Shown: piece by piece, positions 6,449 to 35,700 of the stretch | Position numbering within the stretch: the stretch's first letter is position 1 | Layout: each line of letters opens with the position of its first letter | Assembly (NCBI GenBank): GCA_964247055.1 | Contig: OZ176053.1 | Span: forward strand, 9,300,001-9,364,000 | Reading direction: 5' to 3' | DNA length: 64,000 nt | Source of the DNA: Paragordius varius | Taxonomy: Eukaryota; Animalia; Nematomorpha | Translations under genes and position numbers: made by a program | The notes under the pieces: model-generated | Seen by the model: the letters and a program-made list of their open reading frames with translations, nothing else | Database searches by the model: none | What the model was told of the DNA's origin: nothing

Positions 6449-6469
6449 TATTTATATTTAATATATATA

Positions 6470-12361: not shown

Positions 12362-15300
12362 ATGACAGGAAATCATACACAGACTACTGCAATAAATCAG
12401 CCTAAACTTGCAACACAATTTAACTATCGAATCGCTGGAATAAATTTTCGCCACTTGGAAGATGTTTTTATGCTAACAGCATGGATACTGCTAGTTTTCG
12501 TTGCTAAATTTGGTATCTTATTATTTATTTATAACGCCAAATTAATAAATAAATTCTATGTTGTTAATGCAATGATTTGGTTAATATATTAAGTGTAAAG
12601 TGACCAGATATTTAGAACCCTGGCGCAGTACAAAATTAAAACATACTTTGCCTATTTTTAACCGGATTTTCGGTATTTTATATTAAATAATTTTTTTCGT
12701 TACTATTTTTAAGCTCATTAGAAACAATTAAATTATTAAATTTATTAAAAATTTAATATAAATGTATGTACATATAATTATATTATATGTTATATATATG
12801 GGTATATAATAATACTAGTGTAAATCTCGTGCTGCTACGCAGCCCGAAGAAGCCCTTCGGGCTGGGGGGGGGGGGGGCTATTTGAAAAAAGTGACAAAAT
12901 GATCCACATATATGGATTATTTCGAATAGCAATTTCAAAACGGTGCATTCATACTAATATATTGTTTACTTGGGCGAAAAATAGATTCAAACAATTACTT
13001 TTGAATTATTTTTGAATAATGGCATTTTACGGGAGGAGCGGGTAAAAAGAGGGCCTTAATTTAAAAAGCGAGCCGATTATGTTTGGTGCAATCAAAAATA
13101 AGTAAACAAAAATGAAATTGAATGGTCCAACACGTTTCCAGAAAATTGTCTCAAAGACACGATTTTTGTGGACTTCTGTTTTTAAAAAAAAACGTTTTTT
13201 ACACTGGGTGGGCCCGAACTGGGGGCCTAATTCAAAAAAGGGCGAAGCTATTGTCGAGGCATTCATTAATGATCATATTTTTTCGACATTTCGATTTGAA
13301 TGGATCTACCGGTTTCCCGGAAATAGATCACCAAGCCACTACTTTCCATTTTTATATATAGATTATAATGGTATGTTTGTTTTAAAAAATGCTAATTGTC
13401 AAAAACAATATTATTACCAAATATATGGAGGGAAACAATATATCGGGTTTTTATAAGATGTTGCTGTGTAGATAAAATCATTCACACACGATCTTATGAA
13501 AGTTCTGTTCCATAGCTTTTTTAAAAAATGACTATTTGACAGCAGGTAAAACTATGCGTTGATGAAAAAAAGATAGGTGAATGGATAGAAAATTATTTAA
13601 ATGCCGACTTTGCTACAGTGTAAAATTCAAAAATAATTCAAATAGTTTCGAGTCTACCCAATTAATGGTATATGACGTGACATATTAAAAAATAATTATT
13701 TTTTTATAATAGTAATAATATCTTAAAATAATAAATATATATTTTTCAGATTTATGTAATTGTCCCAATAATTTATGGTTTTGCGAAATTTTATCTAAAA
13801 AAGCTTCACAATTTTCTTCTGTATTTTTGATTATTACAATTGCTTTCAAGGTATCTATTGTGAGTTGTGTTTTTTCCGTAGTCCATATTTTGTTTATAAG
13901 AAAAGGCACGGAAAAGAAAATTAAAATGAGAATTAATAAAAAAATTATTATGTGTGTGTGTATGTGTGTGTGTATGTGTGCCAAAATTAAAATAGGTCTA
14001 TAGATTTGTTTATGCACAAAAGAATGAAAAGAAAACTGGATACAATTTAAAGTTTAGGGAAGCAAAAAATTAAGGAACATACCTCCCACCCAAAACATAA
14101 AAAAGTTGTTTTTTTCCTAGAAAAAAAGGGTTATATCGAAACCAAATATAATGAATTTAAATAATATGTTGCGGTAATACAAAAATTTTCCGTTTGATAA
14201 TTATAATTAAAGTAAACTCAAACAAAATTTAATTAAGCTGAAACCTATATGAAACAAAAATGAATTTTCAAAAGATCAAATTACTAAAATATTAATTTAT
14301 TTTGTGTTTATTTTTGAGGTCGCTTTTGCGGAAGCCCTCAGTGAAAGGTTGGCCTAAATCTGGAATCAGATATTGATAGTTCTGCCATTTCGCGAATGGC
14401 TGCATTTATAAGCGATTTGACCGGTCCAAAACCCAACTCATTTATAATTAGAGCAAAAAATAAAATATTGAAATTAAAGGCCAGAGTTTTTTAGAGCAAA
14501 AAAAACCATTTATTTATTTTAACTAAGGGTACTCTATCGAATTCTACAAACAAAACTTGTATAAATAATTGGTAATTAAAACATATTTATAAAAAAATTA
14601 TTTCAAAAAGCAGTACAAAAGTCAGCGCAGTACGGGCGCGGTTATTTTTCAAAAACCCAGTACTGTACTGCGAAAAACAGCCTATCTGGTCACTTTAATT
14701 AAGTGAAAAAATTATTTTGAAAAAATCTTTAGTTGTGATGCACTCATTCTTTTTTATGTGACGAATTACCGTGGATGAACTAAGGCTTACACGAAAAAAT
14801 ATTGGGATACACGATATAAAAATAGGCTTTTTTCATTTTATTATAACTACGGGCCTGCTCTTTCACGAAAGATAAAAGAAAATCGAAGACGGCTGCGATA
14901 CGCAAAGGGCCACATTTATCTCATGTTAAGATAACTTAGGAGAATGATAACTTTTTATGTTTTTATTCATATAGGGTATAATCTCTCACCTAAGCTGTCC
15001 GAAAACATTCCGGAATCATGTGTTATCTTGCTTTTGGGCATTATTTCAGGCATCGTTTTGTTTTTTTCTCAATTAAGCAACGTAAAGTATACAATTTCAA
15101 CCCAGGTGTTTTTCTTAATACTACTGCCAACATACGTATTTAATATCGGCTATTTTATGCAAATCGGCCCCTTTTTCAAAAACATTGGAATTATTTTGGT
15201 TCTATCGGTTGTTGGAACTGTTTGGAATACTGTTTCGATTGGCATTGGATTATGGGTGATCGGGGAATATGGTAAAACATTTTTTATCGTTGATGGTGAT

Positions 15301-18300
15301 ATTTCAAGTTTTAGCCAATATCATATAATATACTAATTTTTAATCAAATAATTTTTTATTTAAGATTATGAAAATCATATTGTCTTTTTCCTACCCAATA
15401 TAATTTGATTTGATAACACAACAAGAAACTGTAACAATTGTTAATTCACATTTAAACTAAATCAAAAAACTACGGAAAAATTATTTAATTAAAAATTAAG
15501 TATTTTAAAACATTGGAATTTAATTTAACTTATTATATATATATATACAATCGACAATTTTGTTTTAATATTTTTATTAAAATATAATTATAGTTTCTAA
15601 CCATCGCTTTATCATAATCTATTCAATTTTATTAAATGCAATTAGAACAATATATTGGATTGACGAAAACAAAATAAACTTTTAGGTTTAACCGGAGTCA
15701 ATATCCCTGCTCTTCATTGTCTTTTGTATGCCAGCTTGATGTCTGCGGTTGATCCTGTCACTATCATGAGCGTTTTCAATGATGATCATGTGAATGAAGC
15801 TTTAAACACTATAGCTTTTGGTGAATCCCTTATAAATGATGGTGTGGCTATAGTAAGATATTTAATTTAATCCATAAAAAAGATTCGCTATTTAAAAATC
15901 AGAATTTCATTTTATGTAATCAAATGAATTTAAGCTAATCCAGATTGCAAATTGGCTACTAACCCTATCAATATAATTAAAATTATTTTTTAAAAAATGT
16001 TTATGTTCTTAAACTAACCTATTGAAAATTTAATTATATTTTATTTTTAATTTCTTGAATTAAATGGTAACTGTTAACACGCGAAATGGAAAGAATTGTT
16101 ACATAAGCCACTAGTACTACAAGTCTTTGTAAAAAATTTATTAAAGGTTAGAATTATAAATCTTATCTCTATATAATAAAGAATACGTAAATTTTACATA
16201 TGCTTTAAGGCCTTAAACTTTAGATGTTTATGATTCCCGATAAAAGATCTTTTTTGGTATAATAGCAGATTTATCAGTCTAATTAATGTAGTGTTTAAGT
16301 TAATTATTTTTTGTTGCTCCCGGGGTCAAAGCCCGGAGCGAAACCAAATCCTTCTTAAACAATTTAGCCACGATAAGAGTATAAAATGTGAAACAGCTAG
16401 TTTTTTTAAAGCCGTTTTAAAAAAATAAATCGGTTTTAATATTTAACATTGTTAGAAACACCAAATTTCCAGGTATCTGATAATTTATCTACTTGTGTAA
16501 ATTCAATTAAAAAGTTATATTGTTACCTTACAAACATATATTTTTGTTTAAAAAATATAAAAAGTAGGATTCTATTAACTATTTAAAAAAAAATATATTT
16601 GAAAAGGTTTGAAACTGCGAATGTTTTACCAACAAAATGAATCCGCTGTAATCCCATGTCTAAAATGATTTATTATTTAGGTACTATTCAGAATTATTGG
16701 TTCATACAGTGAAATTGGTTTAGTAACGAAACGTGATATATTGTTCGGTGTCATTTCTTTTTTCGTGATTTCTTTTGCTAGCACAATCATTGGGATCATT
16801 TTTGGCCTATTCGCAGGATGGATTACTAGGTAAACTAATATAAGGTCTTCGAACCGGAACCTTATGGAACCGAAATCCGGTTCCGTTGGAGCGGAACCAA
16901 CCCGGTTTTTTTCTCAGGAATCACTCCGGATCTGGTTCCAAAATCTCAACCAGCCCGGTTCCAACCGTCTAGGAACCAATTCAGTTCCCCTTCCACCTCC
17001 AACAAAGTGTCCTATGATATTTTCTTATCCATTTTAAATGGAATTACCATGTTGACAATTTTTTTGTACACCTTACCTTAAAGACTTGAGAAACACAAAC
17101 ATATTACGTAGTTTTTTAATCTAAAAATTATGAACAATATCATAAAAATTTATTAATCTATTAACAAACCAATAACTATACTATAGTGTCCTTAATCAGT
17201 CACCCATAACGGAAAAATGAGCCACATTATATATCAGAGACCGAGGTCCACGGACCGCATGAACCCCTTAATATTCTTTTAATCACGTATTGAATAATAT
17301 CAAATATCATGTAAGGTTATATTAAGGGTACATATTACGGCTCATAACATGGAGAAAAACTTTCTCACGCTAAATTTAGTTTCAGAAGAAATAGTCCAAT
17401 GACCGAATTGCTTGGTATAATCCTTTTTTAAACAATACAAAACACTTATTACCTATCTTTGTACTTATGCGTTTGGCTATTTAATTATTCTAATTGTGTT
17501 TGATTACCACTGCAGATATTTTGGTTTATATTATTTTAAAATGTGAAAACATTTAATGAAAGTCAGAAACCAAAATGGACCGGTTTCAGATGTAAAGAAC
17601 CGGTTGCGGAACCCTTAATCTTTAAGGAATTAACCCAGATCTGGTTATAGTTGCTCGGAAACCACCCCGGTTGATTTTTAAATTCTTAGGAGCCACGCCG
17701 ATTTCGGTTTAAACCGTCCAGGAACCAACCTGGTTCCGGTTACACTTTTTTGAATTGGTTCGAAGCCCTGATACATATATCTTTATAACATTCAAAACTT
17801 TGATAATAAACACATCTTTACCAAATTCCACACAGTTTAAAACCACACATAATTTTGCTAAAATCTTTATTGAAGGATTTTTAGTTAGAAGTTTAACAAG
17901 CATGTATAGTCCCTTACCTTTGTGCGCAAAATCGGGAGGTGAAATAAATATTCTGATATAATATGTATATATACATATATTCTCATTTTTAATTATCAGA
18001 ATTATCATGGTACTTTTAATTTTGGGCTTTACAAATGATAAAGAAAGTCAATAGTACTTTAGTAGTGGTTCCTCCATATGAAAAATAGCAAATGTAGCCA
18101 TGCTAAATAAAATTTTTGGTAAATGGTAAATGCTACATTTATAAAAATATCATTAAATAATTTACTATATTAAAACAGAAGAACAATATTTTTATAATAA
18201 TTTTTAGGGCTTCAAAGTCTTAAATTTTTGGCATACTCAAAAGAATGAGCTAGTTAGACGAGAAGAATTATGATATGCTAAATTAGATTATGTCAACAAA

Positions 18301-21300
18301 TATTATATTTTTGAAACTTATTTCATGGTATATTAAAGCATGGAAAGTTTATAGCATAGATACATTTACAATTCAAATTCACCCATGAACAATTTAAATT
18401 CATTCTTGAACAATTCAAAATCCTAAAAATAAATTATGTTTTTTCGGGCTCGTATAACTCAGCATTAATAAGAAATATATTCTTATGGCATAGTTTATTA
18501 TTTTTTCAGTATTAATTGTAAACGAAATTTCATTTTATAAAAATATAATCAAATATAGGTAGTTTTTGATCTTGAAAAAAAACTTAATTTATTTTATGGT
18601 GAATTTAAAATGTTTAAGGGTGAATTTGAATTGTTTAAGGGTGAATTTGAACTGTAAATGGTACATTATAAAAACCCTTTTTTATAATATAGTGACGATA
18701 ACATTTTTATTAGTAGAATTTTGATTAGCAAATCTTTTCATCTGCAAATTTAAATTAATGTTTTCACAAAATTTTACTTAAATTTAAAGACGACCAAATG
18801 TTTTAAAGAAACGTTCAGCGTTAGGAATTTTATAGAAAAGTGTTTCCAATCTCTTAAAGTGTTCTTATACCGATGACACTATGCTAAGATTTCGTGTCAA
18901 AAAAATTGCTAAAATTTCATATCAAAATAATTGTTAAAATATTTATCAAATATTTTTTATTTTTTATCGCAAATTCTCGGTATTTTTGCGGTTTTATAAA
19001 TTTAGCTTTTATTTGAGGAGGACAAAAATTTGAGACTTTTGAACTATAAATATTGTTCCCTTAAATATATTATATAATAAATTTTAATATATTTGGAATG
19101 AAGTATTTATCTTTCATAAAAAGTTTTTAGCAAAATGTGAAGTGTTAATAACTTTCTCAAAGTACCACAAGAGTCCTGAGACATTTAGGTACAAGAACTC
19201 ATATGAGAAATTAATAATACTAACTCTAAAAAAGTATATTTAAATTTATCTTTTAATTTTAAAGGAAGATCTCAAAACATTTTACTAAATTAATATATTT
19301 AGATATACGAATGCATTACCAACTTCCGAACCAATCTTCGTTTTACTCTTGGCTTATTTGTCATATCTGTTAACTGAAATCTTCACATTTTCTGGAACTT
19401 TATCGTATATATTTTATTTTATTAAATTAATTCTTCTGATTTACTAGTTGTGACAATTTTTCTCTTAGAATAATGTTTTGTGGAATAATGATGCGCAAAT
19501 TGGTAGAAGCCAATATTTCACCAAAGTCAATTTTAACCATAAATTATATAATAAAAACAGCAAGCGCTGCCTGTGAAAGCATAATAATTTTATTCCTTGG
19601 TCTGCTACTAATATTGGATGAGCATGCATGGAACACTGCCTTTGCGTTATTTACACTGCTTTTTTGCTTCGCTTCTAGAGCCATTGGTAATTTCTATTAT
19701 TAATTCTTATAGATTAAAAATTAGAATAAAATTTGAGAATAGAGGGCACTAACGGATACAGTAATTTAGGATTTGACAGTATGATATTATAAAACTGCGC
19801 GCAAAATCGTAGGAGGGTGTAAAAAATATCTTGTTTAAATAAGTAACTTCTGATAGACAAAAAAATTAATCTATCAGGATCACATGGTGCCTTTTATTTT
19901 GGGCCCCACAAGTGGATTAAGACAGTTGTTTCTACTTTTGTGGTAATTTTCCATATCAAAGTCGCAAAATTAGCGCACATTAATATTTTTTGGTAAAAAA
20001 CTAAATTTACTTAAAAAATATTATTAAATTATATTATAAACTATAATTAATAAACTAAGTATTTAGGTGTTGTTTACAAATTTTTCAGTTATATTTAACC
20101 TTTTGTTCACAAGCACCACCCTTATCCCAAAAAAAAACAAAGTAAAATTTAAATTTATTTAATATTATTATGTGTTTTATCCAAAATTTGATGTATTAAG
20201 TTTAGCAAAGTATTTAATAGTTAAATCATGTTTCAACTCAAATGCTTCTTTCCATAGTTCTATCGGAATAGTTTTTACATCAAATGTAAGATTATTAATT
20301 GTTCCATTTAGGTAAACTAACAAAAATATTTAGCAAATTTATCCACTAGAAATTACAAATGATCAACTATTGAATTTATAACAAGTGTATTAATATATAT
20401 ATAATGAACTTGTAGGTCAAATTAAAGGTCAGAAACCGAGCTAATTCATAATTTCCGCTTCTAAAATCCATTAACGCAGTTTTATAAATGAACCTTGTAC
20501 TGATATAATATAATGATTGCTGTTTTAGATATAAATTCTTATTCTAAGAAATATAGGAGTATTTAATTGAAAATCTGAATCGAAAAATCATGATAGAGTT
20601 CCAATTTGTCTTGATGTCCAAAACAATGATTACTTCGTTTTACAATTTATATAGACTCCGTAAAATATTCCCCTTAGATTAAATATATTAAATTAACCAA
20701 TTATCAAACAATAGCAAGTTTAGGCTTATTAACATTATTTATGGTTGTTACTCCAAAAATTTCGCGCCACCTTTTTTCTACAGCCCTTTTTAGGAACCAT
20801 TGCTTTAAGATATTATTAAGATTTTATATAATTCGATGAGACTGTCTCCCCTTAGAAGGAATAAAAAATAGCACATCTTCAAATATATTTTAAATATAAA
20901 TTGTGTTTTTTACAAATCACCAAAATTTGATAGTTAACTAACCTTTAAATTAAATGAGATGATTGATAAAAACGTTTAGTATCATCAAATTATATAGAAT
21001 TTTTTTTATATCTTAAAGCAGGGGTGACCAATACGCGATCTGCAGGCCGCATGCGGCCCTCCGAAATATATATGCAACCCGAGCATTATTTGTAAAAAGT
21101 GGTATTATTTACAGTCATATATTAATTTAAAATAATACTTATTACCCAAACATTTGTCAAATGCGGCCTGTCAGTTTTTTACACAAAAATGCGGCCCTCC
21201 TAGCCATTTGTGTTGGACACTCTGTCTTAAAGTGTTTATGCCAATAATATTTTTTGTTTTACATGTATGGCAATAATTACATTAATTCATATTGTATCTA

Positions 21301-23208
21301 TAATCCTCTTCAATCCTTTTCAACATAAAAATTGTTTAATAGACACCTGAAAAATCTATATTTCCCTTTCGTTTTATGTATGTTGTTTTAATTTATATAA
21401 TGATAAGAAACGAGACGGGTAAAACAAAGTTAGAAACTGGTCATGAAATCCAAGAAGTGGTTATCACTTATTTTCGTAACCAGCCCATTCCACCAATTTA
21501 GTTCTGGTTCCAAAATTTGGAAAACCAGCCTGTTTTTTAAAAAAATTTATAAACCAGCCTTTCTGGTTTTTTAGCGTTTATGAATCACGCTAAATAAAGC
21601 AATTTTTCCGGGTATGTTTTAAGCTTTGATATATGAGCCCTTTTCTGACACTTTAGTTTTTTAAATAATGCATTTCAAAAAAAAATAATTTACCAAAAAT
21701 ACTAAACAATTTAATTTTGTTTTGCGCGTTAAAATGTTTTTTTTTCAAATTATTATTGCAATATTAATTTATATAGGTATTCTAATAATTGTACCTTGGC
21801 TCAATCACTATCGCGAGGATAAGCTCAATAAATTAGATATTTTAATTTTGATTTACGGTGAATTGCAGAGCTCATTTTCGTTTGCCTTAGCACTACTTTT
21901 AGATGAAGATGTTCTAGGCCAACATGTACAACAAATGTTTGTAACCACGACAATCTTTATAGTCATATTTGCGTCCTATATTCAAGTAAAATGATACGAT
22001 ATGTTATTATGTATTTTTTGAACACATATCGAGTTTTTAGAACAGGGGCGTCAACATACCGCCTGTGGGCCGCATGCAGCAGCGACATTGAGCGTTGCCT
22101 GCGTTAATACCAAATTGAAATTGATATTTATTCTTTGTTAAATATCTATTTATCTTGTTAAAATTAAATAAACTTGATACATTTCCCCAACAAATAATAT
22201 TGTTAATTGCTCTCTTCTTAATTTACTCAGAAAATTATATTTGCTGCTTCAATTACTAAACACTATTGATAGTTAGGTAAAGAGTTAAATTAATTTGTTG
22301 CCCACTTAATATTAATTAATTAGAATATCCTAGAAAACGATCGGATATTTGTTTATATTTTTTGAAAATGCGGCTCGCGAAGCCATTTTAGGCACACCTT
22401 ATTACGAATCACATTTAATCTTACTCATTTCTTTTAGAGTAAACCAGGGGTGTCCAAAACAAATGATTTTGTAGACCGTTCTATTAACCTAAAAATCAGC
22501 GAGCTCTTTCGCTGTATATGTGGGCATTCCTGAATGATTTAAGATTTCAAACATAAGACTTTAAAATGCAAATACAATATCAATTTTTAGTTCTTGCACT
22601 TATAAAAAAAATGTTTAGTAAATATCAATTTTACTGAGATTTTGAGAGTTATCCAAATTGCGGATTTAATTTTGCTCGGGCCGCACAGAATCGCGGAGGG
22701 CCTTATGTGGCACGTAGGCCACATGGTTTTTAGTTATTAAGAAAACTAAAGATACGCAAATATAATTTGTCTGTTTGCCTAAAATTGTTATATTAATTTA
22801 AGTAAAAAAACGAAGAACATGTTTGCTCTCACACATACACACCCACTACTCTATTAACAATTTCAAAAATCATATAACTAATAATATAGTTATTTACCTA
22901 CAAAATTCAATAGATAAAACTTTTACTTTGACAGGGCTTGACAATCCGTCCTTTGGTTAAGCTGATTAGAATTTGGGAAAGTCCGCATGAAGAAACATTG
23001 AATAGCATTATATTTACACAAGTTATATATATGTAAAATAAAAACAAAGGGCCTGAATTATGTAACGTTTGGCATCAAAAGCGTTTTGGGACCATGTAGT
23101 ATAAAAGACAAGTATATTTAACTATTATATATGTTATTTTATTCGTATAGAACAGCTGATTATAATGTATTATTTATACAAATATTTTCATCAAAAATGT
23201 CAAATTAA
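12362..23208 (+). CDS. SLC9A: Na+/H+ exchanger paralogue B, divergent, with truncated cytoplasmic tail (~499 aa)
   Basis: Exons 12362-12512, 14975-15271, 15686-15852, 16681-16829, 19303-19404, 19469-19686, 21777-21985, 22935-23021, 23050-23111, 23151-23208 (stop). All introns are GT-AG and the total is 1500 nt in frame. Exons 2, 3, 5, 6 and 7 are identical in length to paralogue C (297, 167, 102, 218, 209). The last exon and the true start are less certain. Confidence 0.87.
12596..14697 (-). mobile_element. hAT transposon derivative in intron 1 of NHE-B
   Basis: 15-bp TIRs TAAAGTGACCAGATA / TATCTGGTCACTTTA; perfect 8-bp TSD ATTAAGTG (12588-95 and 14698-705). Carries a transposase C-terminus (NKIWTTEKTQLTIDTLKAIVIIK..LGQLHKSEKY, 13740-13900, minus). 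Confidence 0.93.
12815..13362 (-). mobile_element. Complete non-autonomous Helitron (548 bp) nested in the hAT
   Basis: On the minus strand: A|TC start, CTAG|T end, no TSD, subterminal hairpin TTCGGGCTGC-GTA-GCAGCACGAG about 11 nt from the end. Homologous to 60990-61568. Confidence 0.9.
16842..17770. mobile_element. hAT-like non-autonomous element in NHE-B intron 4
   Basis: Imperfect TIRs AAGGTCTTCGAACC / GGTTCGAAGCCCTG; many GGAACC/GGTTCC subterminal repeats at both ends; flanks match only 5/8. Confidence 0.7.
18361..18663. mobile_element. MITE family 1 (TA-flanked, terminus TACCATTTACAGTTCAAATTCACCC)
   Basis: Long inverted termini with ~20-bp tandem subunits; related copies at 39178-39424 (opposite orientation) and 6301-6448. 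Confidence 0.8.
21019..21224. mobile_element. hAT-Charlie-type MITE
   Basis: Ends CAGGGGTGACCAA / TTGGACACTCTG; GCGGCCC subterminal motifs; perfect 8-bp TSD TCTTAAAG. Confidence 0.88.
22043..22730. mobile_element. Two adjacent degenerate hAT-Charlie-type MITEs (about 22043-22400 and 22444-22730)
   Basis: Starts CAGGGGCGTCAAC and CAGGGGTGTCCAA; GGGCCGCATGC and AAAATGCGGC motifs; TSD degraded. Confidence 0.65.
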
Positions 23209-23292
23209 TTATGATTTTAAGATTGGGTTACCAATTTAATAACAATAATATAGAGTCTAAACTTTTCAGACTTAAATGGCACTAGACTTAGT

Positions 23293-23358
23293 TAGCATTC
23301 ACCTGTTCAGGGCTGACAGCTATAGTGAAATACACATGGTTTCGGGGTAATTCCTCAC
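23293..23358 (-). mobile_element. Fragment of the tRNA-derived SINE family
   Basis: Shares cctg..cagggctgacag..gtttcgggg with the copy at 48176-48359. Confidence 0.55.
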
Positions 23359-24872
23359 ATATTTATTCATTGTTCATTAATTAGTGAACTCCATTGAAAC
23401 CCTCGCCTTAGTAATTATAATATAAACGTGCTTTATAAAATATATCTCTTTTATATTGATCAGAGCTAGATTGTTTAAATATTTTTGCATAACAATTCTT
23501 GAAAACTATGTCTTGTAAAAAAATTAACATGGATAAATTTTTGAAAAAAAAAATTGTGGAAATCTTTTGATAATTTGTAAACCAGTTTTATCAGGCTCAA
23601 TTCTTATTAATACCATAAGAATAATTTATTTGGTCTTCCCAATAAGAATTTCGCATAATTACGGATTTTCTGATTTTGAAAAAACAAGAAATTATTCACC
23701 CTTTTTTAATATATCTTAAGAATAAAAATGTCTATAATATCAAATTTATATCATTTAATAAAGCGGAAAAATCTCTATCTTTTGAATACAAATATTTTTA
23801 TATAAGGAAGAAAAACAGACATCGGGTATAAACAGTAATAATTATAGGTTTTTTAAATTCACAATTTAAATATTGGTTTCTTCATATGAGAAAAATAAAA
23901 TAATAAGGATGTAGATTAAGTGTCGGCTTTCAGAAACTATTTAGTTTTTGGTGTAATTTTATTCTATCTAGAGTTGTGATTGTTTTTTTTTCTTCATGAT
24001 TACATTTACGATTGCAAAAAAGCTACCATTCCGCCTTTTAAGATTTAATATTAAAAAAAGTTTTTCAATTTTTGTAAATATATTCATTTTTAAAGTTTTT
24101 CACGCTCTATCAATTGGTATATGTTTTGTATACAAAATTATATTCATTGAAAATTCTAGAAAATACACCTAAATTAATATTATTTTTAAAATGGGAAAAA
24201 TCACAGTTTTTAAAAACCTTGTCGGGATTTTTTTTGCTTTTAGCCTACTACAGCATAAGTTATCAGAAACGCAAATAGAATGGTAAAAAACCTTGTCTGG
24301 TGTTGTTTAAAACTGTTACCAAATTTTAAGTATAAATTTAATCTTTATACGATATAATTTTATTTTTTAGATTAGCAATTTAATGCAAAACCTAAATATT
24401 TGGTGGCGATTTGTGTGATATTAAAATTTTACTACTTCATATTTTAAAATATTTTAACGATAAATTATATTTTCCTACCTGATGGCTGCCATTGACAGAA
24501 AAATGATTGCGTTGCATATAATAATAATTACTCCAAAAAAACTATTTTAGTTATTATAATATTATTTTTGAATATAATGCTTGTGTGTCAGAAAACTTTG
24601 ATATCTAAAAAGTGAAGCGTCTAAAATGCAATATTTGAAAGGATAATCGTATTTGATGAAACTATGCAACAAAAGGATTAGGGATTTTATAAAACATAAC
24701 ATTTTTTATGTAAAAACTTTAGTATATTTATTTTTTATTAAAAAACATATAAATAACTCATTGTTCCAAAATTACGGACAACATTTTTAACTCTAAATTT
24801 GGTGTACCCTCTCTATGTATAGAATTTAAAGAAAATATGAATTTCCTGGTCAATGTAAATAATCGTTTAAAT

Positions 24873-25204
24873 CAAAGGTCTCCAACATGAGGCCCTCGAA
24901 AAAAAATTTCAGCCCGCGAAAAAAATAAAACTAAATCAACGCAAAATATTATCATTGAAAAGGGCTATTTACAACTAAGTAACATTGATATTCCTTAAAC
25001 GAACTAAATATTTCTTTCCTTTTGACAATGAAGTAGAAAAGATTTTTATAAAAAATAGTATTTATTGTGATAGTAATTTTTTTAGAGTTTTTTTTATGTT
25101 TGGAATCTAATAAAATATTTATTATTGGCCATATATTTTTCGAATGCGTTGAGATGTTTGAGCTAAAAATGCGGCCCGAAAATAAATTTGTGTCGAAACC
25201 CCTG
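24873..25204. mobile_element. hAT-Charlie-type MITE
   Basis: Ends CAAAGGTCTCCAACA / TGTCGAAACCCCTG; AAAATGCGGCCC motif; perfect 8-bp TSD GTTTAAAT. Confidence 0.88.
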
Positions 25205-26765
25205 GTTTAAATAACTTTAAATCGTCGACTCATGCCTTAAGCAAGGAATAGCAAAATAGAGAAAGCATATGGAACTCAAATTGAAGTTCCATTATTAACA
25301 AAATAATTTAAAAAGTGTATGTATGTAATCTCTATTAAAAAATGAGTTTGCGTGTAGAATGTTTGAAAGCATTTGCTTAAAAGGTCTTTTGAATAGATAA
25401 ATATAACCTCTCGATTAGAAGCATGTTTTTATGATTCCCTTAACACCTATCTTTGTGATGATTGATACAAATGCAAATGTTCTAAAATTAACTTAATATT
25501 TATAGTTTGATAGGTTAATGGAACTATTTTTGTCGTCGAAAATCTTAAACAAGCTGGATACTAACTTGTATTTTTTCTTCCTGTTTAGCCAATATATACA
25601 ATTTTCTGTGTAAATTCCAAGATTATCCATTTTATTTTTTAATTTTTAGAAAGAATATGCATACTTATTCATGATGGGTCAAACACAATTTTAAACATGA
25701 TTAGCACACTTCATTCTTTAATTTAAATGTGATTACACATTATTTATCCTTTATTTTTATTTACAATGGAGCTTCATATTGAGCGAATCATTTATACTAA
25801 ATTTTAATTTTTTCTGTTTATGAAAAAAACTTGAAATTATTATATAAAATAGAATAGCCTCAAATCACAGTGAACATATACAACGTTTTCTCTTGAGGAA
25901 ACCGATAATCGAGCACTAGCTTTATGGCGAAGCAATGAACAAATATTAGCTGTCGGCCCTCCCTATAATACAATTATTTGGTTAAAAAAATTCACCTAAT
26001 GGTTTAGCGCTATGTAAGTGGTATTTGATTTATTAGATTGAAACTATGAAGTAAAATGTGAAACCGTCCGTCAACAATAATCAAAAATCATTTTTCCTTT
26101 ATTTACTTATTATAACACAAAAAAATTGATTTTGCCAAAAATTTATATTGAATAAATTGGTGGTGGATCTTTAGAACTATTACATAAAAACGTTATTTTA
26201 TGATTTGCACTGATCCATCAAAATAAGTTTGTGCTGATAATTAGAGACCTATGTAATATAATTAATCTTTTTGCACAATGTTAACTGGTAACATTTTAGA
26301 AAATGATGAGAGGCTTTATTAACTTTTTTTTAATCTTCTTAACAAAACCCTTATTTTTTTCTTAAGCGGGAAATTATAGAATCGGTAATTGGTGGTTAAT
26401 AATGTTTATCTGTAACGTAAAATATCAAAAGTTTTATATAAATTCAAAACATTTTTAAAAAAACTAATAAATTTATTTTGATTACATATTTAAAACAAAA
26501 ACTCTTCGCAATAGTCTCTATTAATGGCGGAAATGGTAACATCGAACGCTAAACATAAATATTTAATTAGAATGCATGGACCAAAGTAGATGGCTACATT
26601 TATTTTGCTATAGGTTTAGTAATAACACATAAAAGAATTCTGTGATTAATAATTTACTAATATTTATATAAATAAGTTTTTTATAGATATACATGCGTTC
26701 AAATACAAAACTTTAAATTAATCTACAAATGTATAGAATAAGGCACCAATCAACATAAATAAATT

Positions 26766-29700
26766 TTATAATTGATCTTTTTGCAAGGTGTCTGTAGATG
26801 GGACTGTTGAGGTTGATGGTTTAGAGCTAGTCGATTTTATAGAATTTGTCCGATGAAGGTCATTTTTATTAACGGGCGGTGGTTTAAACGTGATGGCTGG
26901 TACATCGTATATAGAATCCCGTTTAACTAATGGTGATGTTGGGGGCATATCTAATAATTTTTTAAATTTATCTGTCAATTTTTGTATTATGTTTAGGTTA
27001 AAAATTTTTAATAAAGGCGCAAAAATATTGGTTAATACCAGTAACAGATGGAGTGGCAGATAGAAATGATGCGGGAGAATCTAAAACAGATGCATCATCA
27101 AGTTTCCCTAATTATAAAATACAACTGTATAATGATAATTATAATACGAATCATTTTAGTAAAAAAAACTTATAGAATATAAAAACCAGCAGCACATATA
27201 TGAGTAATAATAATAAATAAATGATATGGAAAAGAAACCTTTTGCTTTCATAATTTCTTGATTGCTTATTGGTGGTTTGGGGTTAGGATCCAAGATAGAT
27301 GGTAAATGCGCAGGTGCGTTGGAATAAGCATCACTTAGCTTTCTAGGTGGATTGGGCATTTTTTGGGGCGTTAAAGCTGGGGTTTTCCATGGCAATGCCT
27401 TTTCCGCGATGGTTAAAGATTGCCTTGGTATTTCAGCATCTTCAGGCTTTTCGGATTCCGTGGCATTATTTTCGTCTCCATCGGTTTTTTTGTCCTCGCC
27501 AACATCTACTAATTGCATATCTTTTTCAATAGCTAGTGATTTTGGTTTTGAAGTTGACACTCCACTCGTGTCTTTCAAAATACCCTGAGGAGGTGGTGGC
27601 GCAATGATTTCCTCTTTTTTCATAGGTGTTGGTGTAGCGGGAGGTGGGGGCTAATGTGGTATAAAAGCGAAAAATAAACTTGAAGTTTTATTATTCATGA
27701 ACAAATGCTTTTTGAAATTTATAACCTTTACCAAATGAGGATATTTATATGTCGTTTTCACAGGGCACAAAATATAAGGGTTAAAAAAATATTCTGATTA
27801 CCTATAAAAAATGTATCAGTATTATGGTGCTTTTGGTATTATATGGCTTATGAGTGATTTATGAAATTTATTTGCACTTTCATGGTATTTTCCCCATAAA
27901 ACTCGCAAAATTAGCTCACATGTCAAATAAAAAATTTTCGGTGAAAGCTAAATGCCACATTCCAAACATATCATTAATATATATCATAAACCATATTTAT
28001 AAATCAAAACCACATTTATATTTTAATTCGTACTCCGGAATTCAAAAATTTTTGGCCCCATGGATTAGTTATTTTTAATTAAGGCGAAAATGCCGAGGTG
28101 AGCGATAAAAATTTAATACATGCTAGATTGTGACATCAAACATGAATTTTTTTTAAAAAAATGGATATTTTGCTCTAAAATTCAAATTTTGGTAAATATT
28201 GTAGAAGGGTACTTGATGGTATTTTAGCATGGTGGAAACGTTAAAACGCTTTAATTAAATACCACCTTTCTATATAAATTCGAGGATGCTAAAACATTTC
28301 AATCACCTCATTCTGAGGTGATAGATATGTTCAGCATTATTGAATAAAAAGGTGTTTTTCATATATTATAGGTTTTTATATTGTTTCCACTAAAAACCAT
28401 GAGGCAGGCTTCAACAAAATTAGACTTAGCAAGGTATTTCTTATTAAAAAATTATGTCGTAATCTACCACTTATTAACAATTTTATCTCGCAACCTAGGC
28501 ATTTTGTGATTATTTTGAGAGAACTAACCCATTTTGTAGGGGTCCAAAAATTTGCGTATTTTTGGAGTTTACGTATAAAATTATTAATCTAATATAAATC
28601 TGGTTTAGCTTTTTAATCTAGATTTATGATTTTTGAATAGAACATTTAGCATACACTATAAAATATTTATCATAAGGTGTGCTTTTGCAATCTTTGCAAT
28701 GAAGCAATTACCACAAACGTGCAAATAACTTTCTTAAATTATTTTTAAGCCCCAAAACAAATAGCTCCATAACATTTTTCGAATATCTATATATTTCATC
28801 GAACTATTTTTTTGTGTACATTGTGTTTTTAATTATTTTCGAGTACCTTTGGTACAATGGATGGAGGTGTTGTCTCATTTTCATTAGTTTCCTGGTCTTT
28901 GAGCAAATGCTCATTTTCTTGGTTTTGATTAATTGTTTCTTTGTACATTGGCTTTTCTAGTTTTTAGTGTATAAATTTAATTCAATTTAAAACATAAACC
29001 TTAGTTCAAAAAATTATATCATGGTAGCGAAGAAAATTTAATATAGTTACAAGTCGACAAATGTTTAGTTGCGCCTACAAATAAAAATTTTAACTTAATA
29101 AAAAGAAAATGCCCATATAATTTCTAGCGTAAAGCAATAAATGGCAAATAATCCTTCATATATCTATTAATACCACTTGAGATCATGGCACTTAGATGAA
29201 CATCGCCTAATTCTATCTTTTATTGAAGTCTTTTTGGCAAACGATTAGGGAAGGCAAGAGTAAGAAAAATTATTTATAACACTGGAAAAATTCGTGAAAA
29301 ATGTGTTACGAAACATATATTTAAAAACTTCTTTATAGTTTATCATAAATTTAACTTGCGTCTTTTGGAGTTATGGCCACCGTAACTTTTTTCCCTTGAG
29401 TCGATGGTACTGCCTGAGTGTTTGTAGGGCCTCCTGATTTAATTATCTCACCATTTGCCATATTAGGCAATAAGGGAGTTGCATTTGTAGATGGAGGCTT
29501 TAAAGTTTGTGGCTGTTGTTTTTGCAAAGGAATGTCCCCATTAATTTTTATGGTAGGTGGATGTTTAGCTGGGCCAGCTGCAAAAAATAAGCCCTCTTCC
29601 TCTCCACCGCTGCCTGCATCTCCCAAATGACTGCTTGGAGATAAATGCGTTGGAGAACCCGTAAGAGTCATAGATAAGCGTCTAAGAGCTCCGCCGATAC

Positions 29701-32700
29701 CACTAAATTTGGATTTAGTCGATGACCCGGAAATAATGCTATCTGTATTATACAACAAAAAAATAGATTGGAAAGGGAAAAAATATATTATTCTGTAAAA
29801 AAAATTCAACATTCCGTGATATAACGGTAAAGTTAACGAAAATAGGCATTAAAGAAAATAAAGCTACGGACTTCCAAAAAAGTCTATATAGAACATGATC
29901 GATTCCTAAATTTACCATAAATATCTTATTTCCCGAATTTTGGCAGCATATAATCAACTAAAAATATTATATAATGAAAAAAACGCTTAAATAATAATTT
30001 AAAATATATTGCGATAAAAACTTTTTATAATAGTATCAATTATAAAAAATTTTAACCAGAAAGAAAAATATTTTTTTATCAAACGATTATCAACACTTCC
30101 TTCATTATCTTTTTGATATCAATTACATATTGGGGTTGGTTTTGTACCCCAGAACTTAAACTGTGAATAAACTAGTGTGTTGAAAATATTTTGTCAAAAT
30201 TTAATTATCAAAAACATTTTCCTAAACTTCCAGTCCGAAGATGGGATATCTTCAAAATCCATTGAATAAAGAGCTAATTTCAAAATTAATTATCAAATGA
30301 CACCAATGCAATTTAAACCCATTATAAAAGTTAATACATTTTTAAAACATTAAATAAATTTATCCTGTTGTATAAGCATTTAAATAAGTTCAAAGAAAAA
30401 ATGGCGGCCAAGAGATTGAGATAAAATATTGTTTACAAATATAAATATTCAAAAATTGAACTTTGCATATTATTTGGCTTAATATTGAATAGATCGCTCA
30501 AAAAGGTATAATTGATATGTAACAAATGACTTTAACAATAAAGCGAAAGATAGAATGATTATATAAAGGTTGTAAAAAAGGATCCCACATCTTTTATAAT
30601 ATATTTTAATCAAGATTATTTGTGTAATTATAATTCTATCTTTAAATTTTTAATAAATCCAAGTCAATATGTGCTGCACTAAATCATCCATATTTAGATC
30701 GTTATATTATAATCAAACCGTTTTTTCCAAGTCGTTTTTTGTGCGTTTTTGCTCTAGTAAAGGACGTGGTGTTTTTTGTTTAGCTGTGTATCTGTGTTGC
30801 GGACTAGGTTGACCAGATTGTGGTGGATTATTATCGAAAAGCATGTGCCGACTATATTTTTTAACCTGCAATAATCATGAATGTTTGTTAGAAAATCAAA
30901 TATTTTTAATCCAAAATAATCGTAATAAAACTTACGGTATGCATCTGGCGGCAAAAGATATAATAAATGGAATTAAAAAATTTATCTATTAATATTTGAC
31001 TAAAAATATTAATTTTATACAATTTTAATACATTATTTAAATAAGGTTTAAGCTACCAGGGAGAAATTGGAAAGAGCATCGTCAAACCTGTAATAATTTC
31101 ATATTTTAGTGCGTTTTTTTACTTTTTGTTATTTAAATAAACTTTGAGAACAGTACCACAATTTGTTTTGCTAAAATCGAGCATTGATTCTTAAATTTTG
31201 TCCAAAATTTAATTAAGTAAAAATCATAAAATATACTTTTTGCCTGGGTTGGTACATCATGTCCTCAACTAAATGATGCCATTTGTCAGTCTCTTCACGG
31301 TTAAAATAAACCGGATCAAGATGTGATGTGTCAATAATCGGCATTTCTCCAATCGCTTGTTCTTCATTTATCATTCTTTATATTTTAAAAAAAAATAGGA
31401 TATTTTTGAATATGTTAGAAACTAAAAATTAATATCTCTTTTTCTAGGTAATTAAAGTATATTATTGCAAAAATTACGATAAATCCTTTTTGTAAGCATG
31501 AATATCTCCTCCATGTTCCTGGATGTATTCATTAGCATCCCGAAGGTTTAACTTGGTACAGACTTCTACCAATTTATTTTCACGGGATGTTGGCATACGT
31601 TTCATTAAGAACGGTTTGATATATTTGGTTTCCCATAATTCAAATCTTAGATTTTAAAAAAGCATTTAAATTACATTAGATCATCCAAAACATAATAATG
31701 TAAAAACATAGTTTTGTTTAAAAACTTACTGATCTCGAACACGGTTTCTCCCTTTAGCACCAATTAAATCTTCTATACCCACAAGTAAATGATCAAAACA
31801 CTACAAAATTTTATTAGCTATATAAAAAATACCCGTTCAAAAAGAATTTCCGTCATATTTTTATCCTTTGGAGCGGCTTTTTTGACTTGTAAAAACTCTA
31901 CCAATGGCCTTATCGTTAAACCCTAAAATATGAAAAAATAGATTTAGACAATATCCATGTTAATAAACCTATTTTTTAAAATTAATATATTCTAAACCAG
32001 TGTAATTTATTAGACTTAACTTATAACCAAAATGTGAAAAACTAAATTTAAATTATATCCATATAGATAAACCCTATATTAAATAAATTATGTTTTCCAC
32101 CATTCTTAATTTAGTTAACACTTTACATCTCATATGTAATCAAAAAATTCACCCGTATAATTGGGACATAATAATTAAGAAATATAAATGAAATACTCTA
32201 TTCAACATAAATGTTTTCGTATTAATAAAATAATATATTCCGATAATTTCTTAAACCTGAAAAAACGATGTGAATATAACAATGACCACAGTAGTCGTCA
32301 TAAACATGCGTTTAGTATGAAGTCCCAAAGAATCTTGATCTAACAACATTGCCAGTGAAAAGGATATAGCACCACGTAATCCACCATATATCAAAATAAA
32401 AATGTCAACTTTGTTCATTTTAACTAGGCGTCTCCGATTAAGGAGTGGTATTATCAACAAAACACCTGTATATTGCAAAAGCGGTAAATAAATTATTCTA
32501 TCTATATTGGTAAATAATAATTATTGAATTCTATTGATCTAAAACCAAATATTTTGCCATAAAAATGAAAGTTTTAAACGGTTACGGATTTCATAGTTTC
32601 GCTTAATATTCCTTTTTTTGCGCAAAAATTCCTTAGTTTGGGGTTGAATGGGTATGATTTTGGTTCTATATTTCACATTTATAGTAAGTCTAATTTACAG

Positions 32701-35700
32701 TGTGAAAAAATACCCAAAAATAATTTATAAACTACAAGATTTTGTGTGCTACTTTCCTAAAAAAACTAAAAAAAGAAACTAATATAAAAAAATAAGGTTA
32801 ACATCTATAGTTAATTGCAAATGCTTCCAAAAAACGCACATGGTTTCATTTCCCCTGAGAATATTTATGTTGTATTTTGTACAAAATATTCTCTGTATTT
32901 AGTTATGTTACCTATTGCACGATATGACAAGCAAAATACTATGGAACAAAGTGTAAATGCCGTATTCCAAACGTGAGTATCCACGACTGTAGATAAACCA
33001 AGGAAAAGAAATATAATGCTTTCACACATACTACTGAGTAGCTTCATGGTATATTTGACAGAAACGGTCGATTTTTCAGCTATATTGGCTTCAACATATT
33101 TGCGCATAATTAACCCACAAAACACAATTCTATGCAAAATATAAATGTATTTCTTACAGAGCTAAATGATTTAAGAATGAACCTATGTGACTTTAGCAGT
33201 GAATTTGCATTGTTTAAATTAATATTTATAAGTTCTCCATATAAAAATTATTTTTCTATATTAACTTTCATAAATATTGGATATCATTAAAATAATTATT
33301 CAAATTAAAATTTACTCATTAAAACCTTTAAACACCCTCATCAATAATGACAGCAGTTAAATATTTTAATTTATATTTATGAGTCAAAATTAAAAAATAT
33401 ATATTAATTTATATAATAACTTATTTAACAAAAAACTATGGAAATATTGTACAAAAATTTGTTATATTCTCAAATGTGATTTAAAAATCAATATTTACAA
33501 GCCAAAACGCAATGTATATTCTAAAAAAATTTTAATCATATAAGAAGAATCAATATGTTGTATATGATAAAATATATTACGCTAAAATTCCCGAAAGCTT
33601 GAACATGTCCGCCATGAGATAGGAGACGTAAGCCAACAGAAATATAAACAGTGGTTCAATTACAGTTACCTTTTCAGTATATCTAATTTGATATGTGTAT
33701 TAAAATTATGTTTTAGTAATTACTAACTATGAAAATATGATTAATTTAATATATATTCGAATTAATTATCATTAGTTATAAAATCTCTAAAATCCTGTAT
33801 AATCCCTAAAATTAAAAAAAGACATAAGATTGTCTCATCTCTCTTTTTCAACGGATTTATGACAATAAAAAAGTTTTTTTTCCATGTTTCTAGATTTACA
33901 AAGAGTGCATTACATACTTAGTTAGCCAACTTGTGAAGAATGCAAAAAGGCTACCAATGAGTGTACCACCAAGTGCCACGACGAAAAATGATATAACACC
34001 ATAAACAATATCTTGAGTTATTATATTGCGAGGACCAATTTTGCTATATGTACCAAACATATTGTATAGCACCTAAAAAATATTACAAATATATAAATAT
34101 CATCAATAAAGTTCATTTGAAAAAAACTATGATAAATGGTTAATTTTTTTGTCAAAAAAAATAAAACTGTACAACTAAAACGTATCTAAAACTTCTGATA
34201 CAGGAAAACATTTTCTTATCCGTTAAATTTTTTCTTTTGGCGAAATTAATTCTCATATGAATTAATTTAAGTATAAATTCTCTTAATTAAAATATCATTC
34301 AATCATTTACTTACAAAATATTAAATATATTCTTTTTGTGACCACTAAAACATATAACTAAGCCAAATTTCGCTAGATTATTAAATTAAATACAACTTAC
34401 AACGGCAACACCGTCGTTTAATAAGGATTCTCCAAACACTACGATATGTAGGACCTCATTTACTTGGGCTTCCTCAAAAACCGCTAAAATAGCGACAGGG
34501 TCTACAGCAGAGATCAAGCTACTGAATAGCAAACAATGTAAGAGAGGCAAATGGTATCCATACCAACCTAAACGCACAAATAAATTTGTGTAATAAGTTG
34601 ATTTGTTAATACTTGCATAGGTTAAAAACTGATGAAATTGCAGATATAAAATGTTTTGCAAAAAATATTCTTATTAACAAATTTTTTATTTATAATCTAT
34701 ACATTTTAAGTATTACAACTTAAATCTGTTTAAAGTTTTAGTGGCATTTCTCCCCCATATTATGGGCTAAAGTGGGTAAAAATGAACCTATTATAAAAAG
34801 TTTTTAATTTATACATATTAATCTTGGACGTTTGAACATATACACGACCATGTGATCATTTATTATAATTCAGGCAGTGATTTCATAATATACTATCACA
34901 AATCATTGTATACAAAAATATAGATCCTCTAACGTTTTTAATATTAATATATTTGTTTGCAAAAAACTAACCCGCCACAGATACGGCATACAGAGAAAAC
35001 CCGACCATTAATGTGTTCCAAAGAGTGCCAACCACAGCCAATAGTAAAATGGTACCGATATTTTCAAAGAATGGTCTTCGAGGCATAAAATACCCCGCTT
35101 CCAACACGATGGGTGGCAGCAAGAATAAAAAGAAAACGGACGTTGACAAGCTATAATCCAGATCCTCTGAGCTGGAGAAGAATAAAATCATTCCAGTCAA
35201 AACGCCAAGCATAATTAACATACATGATTCGGGTATGTAGGATGCCGGTTTATGAGACAAATGAAAACCTAATTAGGAAAAATTATTTTTTACTTTTTTA
35301 TTTTTTCAATAACAAATATGCATTTCCTGGCCAACTTTTACCATTCTCAAAAGTAAGGACCTAAATTGGATAATTATTACGGACCCGTGGAGGCTTTAAT
35401 TTAATCGATCGCAAGGCCTAAGGCTGACATTGATGATATAAAATTGTGAAGTTAAGGGGCTCAAACCTATACAAAAAAGCAATCGGACGCCCTGACCACC
35501 CTACTAAACCAATTAATAAGTTGTGCTATGATAATATATCAATCATACAATAGTGTGCTGTGACCAAGGTGTGTATACATGTGTATATTATATGCAGTAT
35601 AAAATAACGATTATAAGGACAAAATCTTAAAACTAGAAAAATATTTTTTAAAAAAGACAACCATATATTTGTTTTAAATAAAATTCATGTTTTGGAATGC

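What the first reader, a model, noticed from the sequence alone, without database searches (positions are those of the whole stretch)
14975..21985. NHE-B: intact gene with near-invariant transport residues replaced - candidate non-canonical or non-transporting exchanger
Seen: B keeps frame, exon sizes and splice sites, yet has LLPTYVFNIGY for LLPPI.L(D/E)AGY, DPVTIMSVFNDD for DPVA.LAVFEE, and YGELQSSFSF for YGGLRGAI.F. It retains GESLIND, TEIF..SG, CES and SRAIG. C has the canonical forms of all three motifs, and A of the two that lie in this window. Established: in human NHE1 the equivalent P167/P168, D172, G455/G456 and R458 matter for activity or pH sensing, E262/D267 form the ion site, and NHEs are dimers. 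Inference: B may have altered ion selectivity or stoichiometry, act as a leak or sensor, or be an inactive subunit modulating A/C by heterodimerisation.
Basis: partly seen in the sequence, partly recalled or inferred. Interest (0 to 1): 0.75.

Follow-up and report, generated by a model that had tools for sequence, protein, structure and literature searches.

The report
Fast-evolving, tail-less Na+/H+ exchanger copy
In a hairworm genome, the middle of three neighbouring sodium/proton-exchanger genes is an inverted, shortened copy that evolves 10-18 times faster than its sister gene yet keeps a clean reading frame, so it is more likely a still-used but deregulated exchanger than a dead gene, although no RNA evidence could be obtained.

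Summary
Copy B (+ strand) of an NHE3-like Na+/H+ exchanger has clean GT-AG exons and the three replaced motifs; neighbours A and C are canonical. The window comes from a hairworm (Nematomorpha). Gordionus has the same three-gene cluster, all copies canonical.

B is sister to A and inverted, and its protein branch is 10-18x longer. It is not a long-dead pseudogene:
- B-branch changes hit 57% of conserved third codon positions but 12% of second positions.
- Replacements are conservative.
- Neutral drift of 0.05-0.1 substitutions/site leaves the 464-codon frame stop-free in only 3.6%-0.2% of simulations.

"Intact" is only half true. The ORF runs 12362-23036, wider than the reported span. It lacks the signal peptide of A, C and Gordionus, and no cytoplasmic tail (CHP/PIP2 region) is detectable.

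The ion site is kept (D238, E262, S263, N266, D267, E391, R425). D172N is tolerated in NHE1, and P168T and FEE variants occur in other NHEs. The truly unusual loss is the invariant GGLRG crossover (G456E, R458Q, G459S).

No RNA evidence either way. Best reading: a constrained but relaxed, membrane-domain-only exchanger. A recently dead relic is the main rival. The scan had not noted this before.

The parts
12362..12512 (+). B exon 0. The ATG at 12362 lies directly after in-frame stops. It encodes the mature N-terminus and first helix (..YRIAGINF..AKFG). The signal-peptide segment present in A, C and Gordionus is missing.
14975..15271 (+). B exon 1, 297 nt as in C. Holds LLPTYVFNIGY (P168T, D172N by NHE1 numbering). 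E131-equivalent PES is kept.
   Evidence: (PF00999, 49.2 bits)
15686..15852 (+). B exon 2, 167 nt as in C. Holds DPVTIMSVFNDD (D238 and P239 kept; E247N, E248D) and GESLIND (E262, S263, N266, D267 kept).
   Evidence: (48.9 bits)
16681..16829 (+). B exon 3, 149 nt (155 in C; an in-frame 2-codon deletion).
19303..19404 (+). B exon 4, 102 nt as in C. Holds SEPIF (E391 equivalent kept) and TEIFTFSG. It is followed by a 64-nt intron.
19469..19686 (+). B exon 5, 218 nt as in C. Holds MMRKLVEANIS (R425 equivalent kept), CES and SRAIG (R440 equivalent kept).
   Evidence: (25.5 bits)
21777..21985 (+). B exon 6, 209 nt as in C. Holds YGELQSSFSF in place of the invariant YGGLRGA(I/V)(S/A)F (G456E, R458Q, G459S).
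22935..23036 (+). B exon 7. Holds GLTIRPLV (R500 equivalent kept), then a juxtamembrane stretch that has lost its basic residues. If the weak GTTATA donor at 23022 is not used, the frame ends with TAA at 23034-23036 and an AATAAA follows at once. All three frames hit stops within about 170 nt.
   Evidence: tail HMM E=0.002
23037..26770 (.). Space between B and the 3' end of C. No cytoplasmic-tail exon of B is detectable here.
1..2272 (-). Gene A (first three coding exons: 2272-2047, 1865-1569, 160-1, cut by the window start). Canonical; it has a signal peptide and is the sister of B.
27237..39954 (-). Gene C. Canonical and full length, with a signal peptide and tail exons. It has a 32-nt intron at 31832-31801.

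Best explanation
B is a lineage-specific, inverted duplicate of the neighbouring NHE3-like gene A in a hairworm. It encodes a 464-residue protein made only of the membrane domain. Shown: it keeps the NHE hydropathy profile, the cation/proton site (S263, N266, D267, D238) and the buried E262-R425 pair. It has been under purifying selection, relaxed roughly ten-fold (omega at most about 0.3, against about 0.02 for A). Inferred: it still folds and dimerises like an NHE and still binds Na+/H+ at D267. It has lost all tail-borne control (CHP binding, the PIP2 motif, pH set-point). Its TM12 crossover is remodelled: the R458 positive charge is gone and a glutamate is added at 456. The E247 partner of the R500 salt-bridge switch is also lost. 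The most likely outcome is a poorly regulated, kinetically altered exchanger, or a weak or inactive protomer that pairs with A or C. It is unlikely to be a new kind of transporter.
For: Family and residues: PF00999 hits on exons 1, 2 and 5. Best solved relatives are NHE3 7x2u and NHE1 7dsw. Residue roles come from PMC8190280, PMC7014192 and PMC6181914.
Origin: nearest annotated relatives are the Gordionus NHEs. Gordionus has the cluster C-orthologue / middle gene / A-orthologue on one strand, in the same order as C-B-A here, but here B is inverted. (A,B) is a clade with support 99/98. B's end branch is 0.86 against 0.08 for A, or 1.10 against 0.06 on the columns both have.
Selection: A-B differences by codon position are 0.29/0.13/0.60. 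NG86 dN is 0.233 and the four-fold-site distance is about 1.5. At sites where A and both A-type Gordionus copies (A-orthologue and middle gene) agree, B changed 12% of second positions and 57% of third positions (Fisher p = 7e-9). Replacements average BLOSUM62 +0.52, against -0.37 for random single-base changes. The hydropathy profile correlates with C at r = 0.88.
Frame: there are no stops in 1392 nt, and all 14 splice dinucleotides are intact. In simulation, P(no stop) is 0.036 at 0.05 neutral substitutions per site and 0.002 at 0.1.
An ATG sits within four codons of where homology to A and C begins.
Against: No transcript evidence. The only RNA-labelled run laid (small, and its RNA label is a guess) has nothing on B's exons, and the run index found no RNA holder. 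The signal peptide and the whole tail are missing or unrecognisable, although CHP1 binding to the tail promotes maturation and surface expression of NHE1 and NHE3 (PMC8190280, PMC9132474). The GGLRG crossover, invariant in the other NHEs compared, is lost; the equivalent Arg is needed in a plant NHX (PMC7014192). Changes are spread evenly over the exons and lean modestly to A/T (GC>AT 31, AT>GC 23) and to FYMINK residues, as expected from plain relaxation. No orthologue carrying the same changes is known, and the Gordionus middle gene is canonical. The frame test cannot exclude death within the last 0.03-0.05 substitutions per site or so.
Confidence: 0.5

Rival explanations
1. B is a relic. 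It was a paralogue that evolved fast under relaxed constraint and has recently died, for example when a rearrangement removed its signal-peptide end and its tail. It has not yet collected stops.
For: Both ends are truncated relative to A, C and Gordionus. B is inverted relative to the ancestral order. Invariant residues are lost. There is no RNA signal. Drift is towards A/T and spread evenly.
Against: No remnant of the removed parts is recognisable on either strand within the window. So the loss is either old or was a clean deletion. If it is old, the eight membrane-domain exons have stayed open while the rest decayed. The frame and the 14 splice sites limit any neutral phase to under about 0.05 substitutions per site, against a B-branch silent divergence of at least about 0.7.
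Confidence: 0.3
2. B is a complete gene whose first exon (signal peptide) and tail exons exist but are too diverged, or too far away, to be recognised. It works as a fairly ordinary, regulated Na+/H+ exchanger.
For: NHE tails are poorly conserved, and B's last recognisable exon already differs at 62% of hairworm-invariant columns. A possible acceptor (ACAG|G) lies at 12367-12368, just inside the ATG codon region. A weak donor follows FTQ at 23022. The core ion-site residues are kept.
Against: The strongly conserved exon after TM13 (..DHLL.G.ED.IG.., profile E=6e-7 in C) has no counterpart in B. A profile of the first 220 tail residues finds only exon 7. All three frames close within about 170 nt after exon 7. 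The GGLRG loss argues against ordinary kinetics.
Confidence: 0.15

Closest known systems
Gordionus sp. m RMFG-2023 NHE cluster on OX940784.2: XP_065315280/CAK9295652 (A-type), XP_065317017 (middle gene), XP_065316980/CAK9295649 (C-type)
   Same: Same three-gene tandem cluster in the same order. Same exon structure in the membrane domain. B is nearest to the A-type copies (56% to P0001, 59% to window A).
   Different: All three Gordionus genes lie on one strand, have signal peptides and tails, and carry LLPPI..D/E, FEE and YGGLRG. B is inverted, truncated and 10-18x faster. A B + middle-gene clade is rejected (p-AU 0.0046).
Human NHE3 / NHE1 (SLC9A3, SLC9A1; PDB 7x2u, 7dsw, 23xi)
   Same: Plasma-membrane-type CPA1 fold. 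Kept residues: E131, P167, D238, P239, E262, S263, N266, D267, E391, R425, R440, R500.
   Different: P168T, D172N, E247N, E248D, G456E, R458Q, G459S. No CHP-binding helix, no juxtamembrane basic (PIP2) motif and no C-terminal regulatory domain.
Archaeal NhaP exchangers (PaNhaP, MjNhaP1)
   Same: CPA1 exchangers that work as little more than a membrane domain, with the E-N-D-R signature (PMC6181914). They show that a long tail is not needed for exchange as such.
   Different: Prokaryotic and only distantly related. B is a secondarily truncated animal NHE whose relatives depend on CHP.
Schizosaccharomyces pombe SpNHE1 (sod2)
   Same: An active Na+/H+ antiporter with no Arg or Lys at the centre of the TM XI crossover, where human NHE1 has R458 (PMC5643542). 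It is a precedent that antiport can survive without that charge.
   Different: A fungal NHA-type protein with a His nearby that is itself essential. B instead adds an acidic residue (E456).

Membership tests
CPA1 / SLC9A Na+/H+ exchanger (Pfam PF00999) | Significant match to the Na_H_Exchanger membrane-domain profile | tested here: met
   Exons 1 and 2 score 49.2 and 48.9 bits (cut-off 26.2); exon 5 scores 25.5 bits. The C exons score 65.7, 53.3 and 37.1 bits.
CPA1 / SLC9A Na+/H+ exchanger (Pfam PF00999) | CPA1 signature: Glu one turn below the site, an Asn-Asp pair, and Arg on the partner helix (E262, N266, D267, R425 in NHE1; positions 5-8 of Masrati et al. 2018) | tested here: met
   GESLIND and MMRKLVEAN are present. 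The motif definition is from PMC6181914.
CPA1 / SLC9A Na+/H+ exchanger (Pfam PF00999) | First crossover helix with the Asp-Pro (D238-P239) | tested here: met
   SAVDPV is kept.
Animal plasma-membrane NHE (NHE1-5 type) | Second crossover Gly-Gly-x-Arg-Gly with R458 | tested here: not met
   B has YGELQS. YGGLRG is in 34 of the 35 other NHEs that cover it, and the last has YSGLRG.
Animal plasma-membrane NHE (NHE1-5 type) | Cytoplasmic tail with juxtamembrane basic motif and CHP-binding helix | tested here: not met
   None found by tblastn or by tail profile. The C tail is found easily by the same searches.
Animal plasma-membrane NHE (NHE1-5 type) | N-terminal signal peptide or first hydrophobic segment | tested here: not met
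   B's ORF opens at the position of the cleavage site in C, with stops just upstream. An undetected upstream exon is not excluded.
Animal plasma-membrane NHE (NHE1-5 type) | 13-helix membrane-domain topology | tested here: inconclusive
   The hydropathy profile correlates with C (r=0.88) and with P0001 (r=0.86). No structure prediction was made, because the joined model has no reference.
Animal plasma-membrane NHE (NHE1-5 type) | Electroneutral Na+/H+ exchange; homodimer | not testable with these tools
   Needs expression and flux assays.
Processed or decayed pseudogene | Stops, frameshifts, broken splice sites, and equal change at all codon positions | tested here: not met
   No stop in 464 codons and all GT-AG sites intact. 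Second against third codon position: 12% against 57% changed. Introns are retained.

The most novel reading that the evidence does not exclude
B is an expressed, selected, membrane-domain-only NHE. Its charge-altered TM12 crossover (R458 lost, E456 gained) and lost E247 switch give it a non-exchanger behaviour. It could be an uncoupled cation/proton leak or a conformationally locked protomer, and it could modulate A or C through heterodimers. That would make it a natural pseudo-transporter subunit in the SLC9A family.
Probability: 0.2. Interest if true: 0.6.

Novelty: new variant of a known kind. Interest (0 to 1): 0.35.

Why it matters
If B is expressed, it is a natural experiment on an animal NHE. 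It shows which parts can go (signal peptide, CHP/PIP2 tail, the invariant GGLRG crossover with R458) while selection still holds the fold and the D267 site. That bears on what R458 and the glycine-rich crossover actually do, and on whether SLC9A dimers can contain non-canonical protomers. If it is not expressed, it is an ordinary case of asymmetric decay after tandem duplication in a little-studied parasite phylum.

Tried and rejected
1. dN/dS from relatives' reads. The runs labelled as other organisms (X3, X6, X7) hold contigs nearly identical to the window, so they contain the same species and give no divergence.
2. Expression. No RNA holder is in the index, and the one RNA-guess run laid (X9) has only a 36-nt intronic scrap. 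This is uninformative, because the run is tiny.
3. Pairwise dS. NG86 and YN00 fail because silent sites are saturated between A, B, C and Gordionus. I replaced them with codon-position and four-fold-site counts.
4. A decayed tail exon. The in-place string AFWDHVV* at about 23085-23110 looked like the DHLL exon, but DNA alignment to three orthologous exons is no better than shuffles (p 0.08-0.67). The 15-residue match at 26659-26703 sits in a 23-codon stop-bounded scrap (E 0.04-0.5). Both were dropped.
5. Tail exons left behind on the other strand by the inversion. None were found.
6. One-to-one orthology of B with the Gordionus middle gene. Rejected by the AU test.
7. Word search with exon 1 for same-species or related ORF fragments or spliced fragments. 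Nothing scored. This says nothing about longer proteins.
8. A compensated frameshift as the cause of the GELQSS cluster. The in-register DNA identity gives no sign of one.
9. P0084 looked even more divergent than B, but it is a bad gene model with a repeat insertion.
Full report
WHAT IS THERE. The window is AT-rich animal DNA (GC 0.23-0.36) and carries three Na+/H+ exchanger genes:
- A lies on the - strand (2272 down to 1, cut by the window start).
- B lies on the + strand.
- C lies on the - strand (39954 down to about 27237).
Exon pieces of B hit Pfam PF00999. Their best solved relatives are NHE3 (7x2u) and NHE1 (7dsw and others). The alignment to NHE1 confirms the equivalences P167 / P168->T / D172->N.

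GENE MODEL. Reading the DNA and running a scripted junction search guided by the Gordionus proteins gave the same eight exons: 12362-12512, 14975-15271, 15686-15852, 16681-16829, 19303-19404, 19469-19686, 21777-21985 and 22935-23033, plus TAA.
- All junctions are GT-AG.
- Exon lengths and phases equal those of C, except for a 6-nt in-frame deletion in the fourth exon.
- The product is 464 residues with no stop.
- The gene therefore extends beyond the reported 14975-21985 on both sides.

Two things are missing.
(i) The signal peptide. A, C and the Gordionus proteins begin with a hydrophobic signal-peptide-like segment in the same exon. B's frame opens with ATG exactly where the mature part begins, and in-frame stops lie just upstream.
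(ii) The cytoplasmic tail. After exon 7 all three frames close within about 170 nt. Neither tblastn with four NHE tails nor a profile of the first 220 tail residues of 29 NHEs finds any tail exon of B on either strand. The same searches find the tail exons of C at E down to 3e-12. Two faint look-alikes were examined and dropped. The juxtamembrane stretch that B does keep has lost its basic residues.

WHOSE GENOME, AND WHERE B CAME FROM. An exhaustive profile search with exon 1 gave as best hits three proteins of the horsehair worm Gordionus sp. m RMFG-2023, at 54-57% identity; everything else was at 35-50%.
- A is 76% identical to the Gordionus A-type protein and C is 82% identical to the C-type protein. 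B is only 50-59% identical to any of them. The window is thus from another nematomorph.
- On Gordionus chromosome OX940784.2 the order is C-orthologue, a middle gene, A-orthologue, all on one strand. The window has the same order, C-B-A, but B is inverted.
- All Gordionus copies have canonical motifs.
- In a maximum-likelihood tree of 39 NHEs, A and B are sisters (99/98). The two Gordionus A-type genes are sisters (95/80). The four form a clade (100/98) next to C plus its orthologue.
- A clade of B with the Gordionus middle gene is rejected (p-AU 0.0046). So there were either independent duplications or concerted evolution within each species.
- B's terminal branch is 0.86 substitutions per site against 0.08 for A. 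On the 201 columns that both have, it is 1.10 against 0.06.

IS B UNDER SELECTION? Silent sites between A and B are near saturation. Third-position difference is 0.60, and 28 of 44 four-fold sites differ, giving an F81 distance of about 1.5. NG86 dN is 0.233. With nearly all protein change on B's branch, omega is at most about 0.3 for B and about 0.02 for A.
- A branch-specific count agrees. At sites where A and both A-type Gordionus copies (A-orthologue and middle gene) agree, B changed 28 of 114 first positions, 17 of 139 second positions and 26 of 46 third positions. Second against third gives Fisher p = 7e-9.
- Replacements at hairworm-invariant columns are conservative (mean BLOSUM62 +0.52, against -0.37 expected for random single-base changes).
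- The hydropathy profile is kept (r = 0.88 with C).
- Simulated neutral drift with the intron base composition leaves the 1392-nt frame stop-free in 25% of trials at 0.02 substitutions per site, 3.6% at 0.05 and 0.2% at 0.1. The 28 splice-site bases would all survive with probability 0.25, 0.06 and 0.004 at 0.05, 0.1 and 0.2.
- B was therefore held open by selection for nearly all of its divergence. Only a very recent death is compatible with the data.
- The signature is still one of relaxation, not redesign. Departures are spread evenly over the exons (25-42% of hairworm-invariant columns, 62% in the last exon). Base changes lean modestly to A/T (GC>AT 31, AT>GC 23). FYMINK residues rise and GARP residues fall.

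WHICH RESIDUES REALLY MATTER. Against 38 other sequences, B departs at 8 of 28 invariant columns and at 11 of 56 columns conserved at 95% or more. A, C and the Gordionus copies depart at none. The only worse sequence is a faulty gene model.

Kept in B:
- E131.
- D238-P239 (D238A abolishes NHE1 transport).
- S263 and D267 (direct cation ligands; D267N is dead).
- N266.
- E262 paired with R425.
- E391, R440 and R500.
Residue roles are from PMC8190280, PMC7014192 and PMC6181914. The CPA1 signature E-N-D-R is intact.

Changed in B:
- P168T. This also occurs in two otherwise canonical NHEs.
- D172N. NHE1 D172E/N/Q mutants are active.
- E247N and E248D. In NHE1, R500 switches between E247 (inward state) and E248 (outward state). 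The FEE motif does vary in other NHEs.
- The crossover YGGLRGA -> YGELQSS, that is G456E, R458Q, G459S and A460S. This is the only change with no natural precedent in the set. R458 is one of the four core charges said to compensate the helix dipoles, and its equivalent is needed in a plant NHX. G455/G456 mutations shift NHE1 pH sensing (Wakabayashi et al. 2003, known to me by title only; the paper is not held). An active fission-yeast antiporter lacks this Arg (PMC5643542).
- The N-cap of TM12b interacts with D238 in the outward state. An acidic residue at 456 next to it could plausibly disturb the cycle; this is inference.

EXPRESSION. No evidence either way. The run index lists no RNA holder. 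The runs under other organism labels contain the same species at low depth (contigs with 0-1 differences). The single RNA-guess run laid has nothing on the exons. A word search with exon 1 for ORF or transcript fragments found nothing.

VERDICT.
- The best reading (0.5) is a selected but strongly relaxed, membrane-domain-only NHE paralogue. It keeps the ion site but has lost tail regulation and the R458 crossover, so it is probably a deregulated or weak exchanger, or a partner protomer for A or C.
- A recently dead relic (0.3) and a complete gene with unrecognised end exons (0.15) remain open.
- B is a new variant of a known family, of moderate interest.

LIMITS OF METHOD. The joined model was built only inside scripts, from coordinates, for local alignment, trees and simulations. 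No full-length database search or structure prediction was made with it. Earlier scan notes on this genome mention micro-introns in an NHE gene just outside the window and an NHE/Hippo half-duplication on another piece. Neither describes B.

Noticed in passing
window 4658-6289 (+): Between A and B lie ORFs of a non-LTR retrotransposon. One ORF (5319-5978) hits reverse transcriptase RVT_1 (E=8e-11). Fragments of a related repeat occur in B's first intron (13102-13453) and at 6385-6725.
   Followed up: partly
window 18300-18700 (B intron 3): A very high-copy element. Contig depth there reaches 4,981-27,751 in one run, against mostly about 1-100 elsewhere on the stretch. Two 21-nt tandem arrays in inverted orientation lie at 18368-18419 and 18598-18655.
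   Followed up: partly
window 31801-31832 (- strand, gene C): A 32-nt GT-AG intron lies between the exon ending ..ILFER and the exon starting CFDHLL. It fits the micro-introns noted elsewhere in this genome.
   Followed up: partly
window 15807-15849 (B exon 2): One low-depth contig of run X3 differs at five places in 43 nt. Four are third codon positions. The fifth, together with one of those four in the same codon, turns the Ser of GESLIND into Ala. It may be a second B-like copy or a divergent haplotype.
   Followed up: no
L001 34228-39855 and L002 10001-22788 (Gordionus): The Gordionus middle gene and A-orthologue are 85% identical in protein, with dS about 0.65, while every comparison involving A, B or C is saturated or close to it. 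This suggests recent duplication or gene conversion inside Gordionus. The RefSeq isoform XP_065317017 skips membrane-domain exons and carries a second GLTI..-like segment, so it looks like a doubtful model.
   Followed up: partly
protein P0083 (522 aa, sister to the hairworm NHE clade): It naturally carries Asn at the D172 position and YSGLRG at the crossover. So mild departures at these sites occur in another long-branch NHE.
   Followed up: no
window 16840-17000 and 17540-17780 (B intron 3): Stretches rich in GGAACC/GGTTCC palindromic units. They look like a small foldback or MITE-type repeat.
   Followed up: no
window 19403: One contig of run X3, at depth about 204, shows an extra A after 19403 at the end of B exon 4. 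Depth in that bin is otherwise about 37. It probably comes from an unrelated abundant AT-rich sequence laid at 80% likeness.
   Followed up: no
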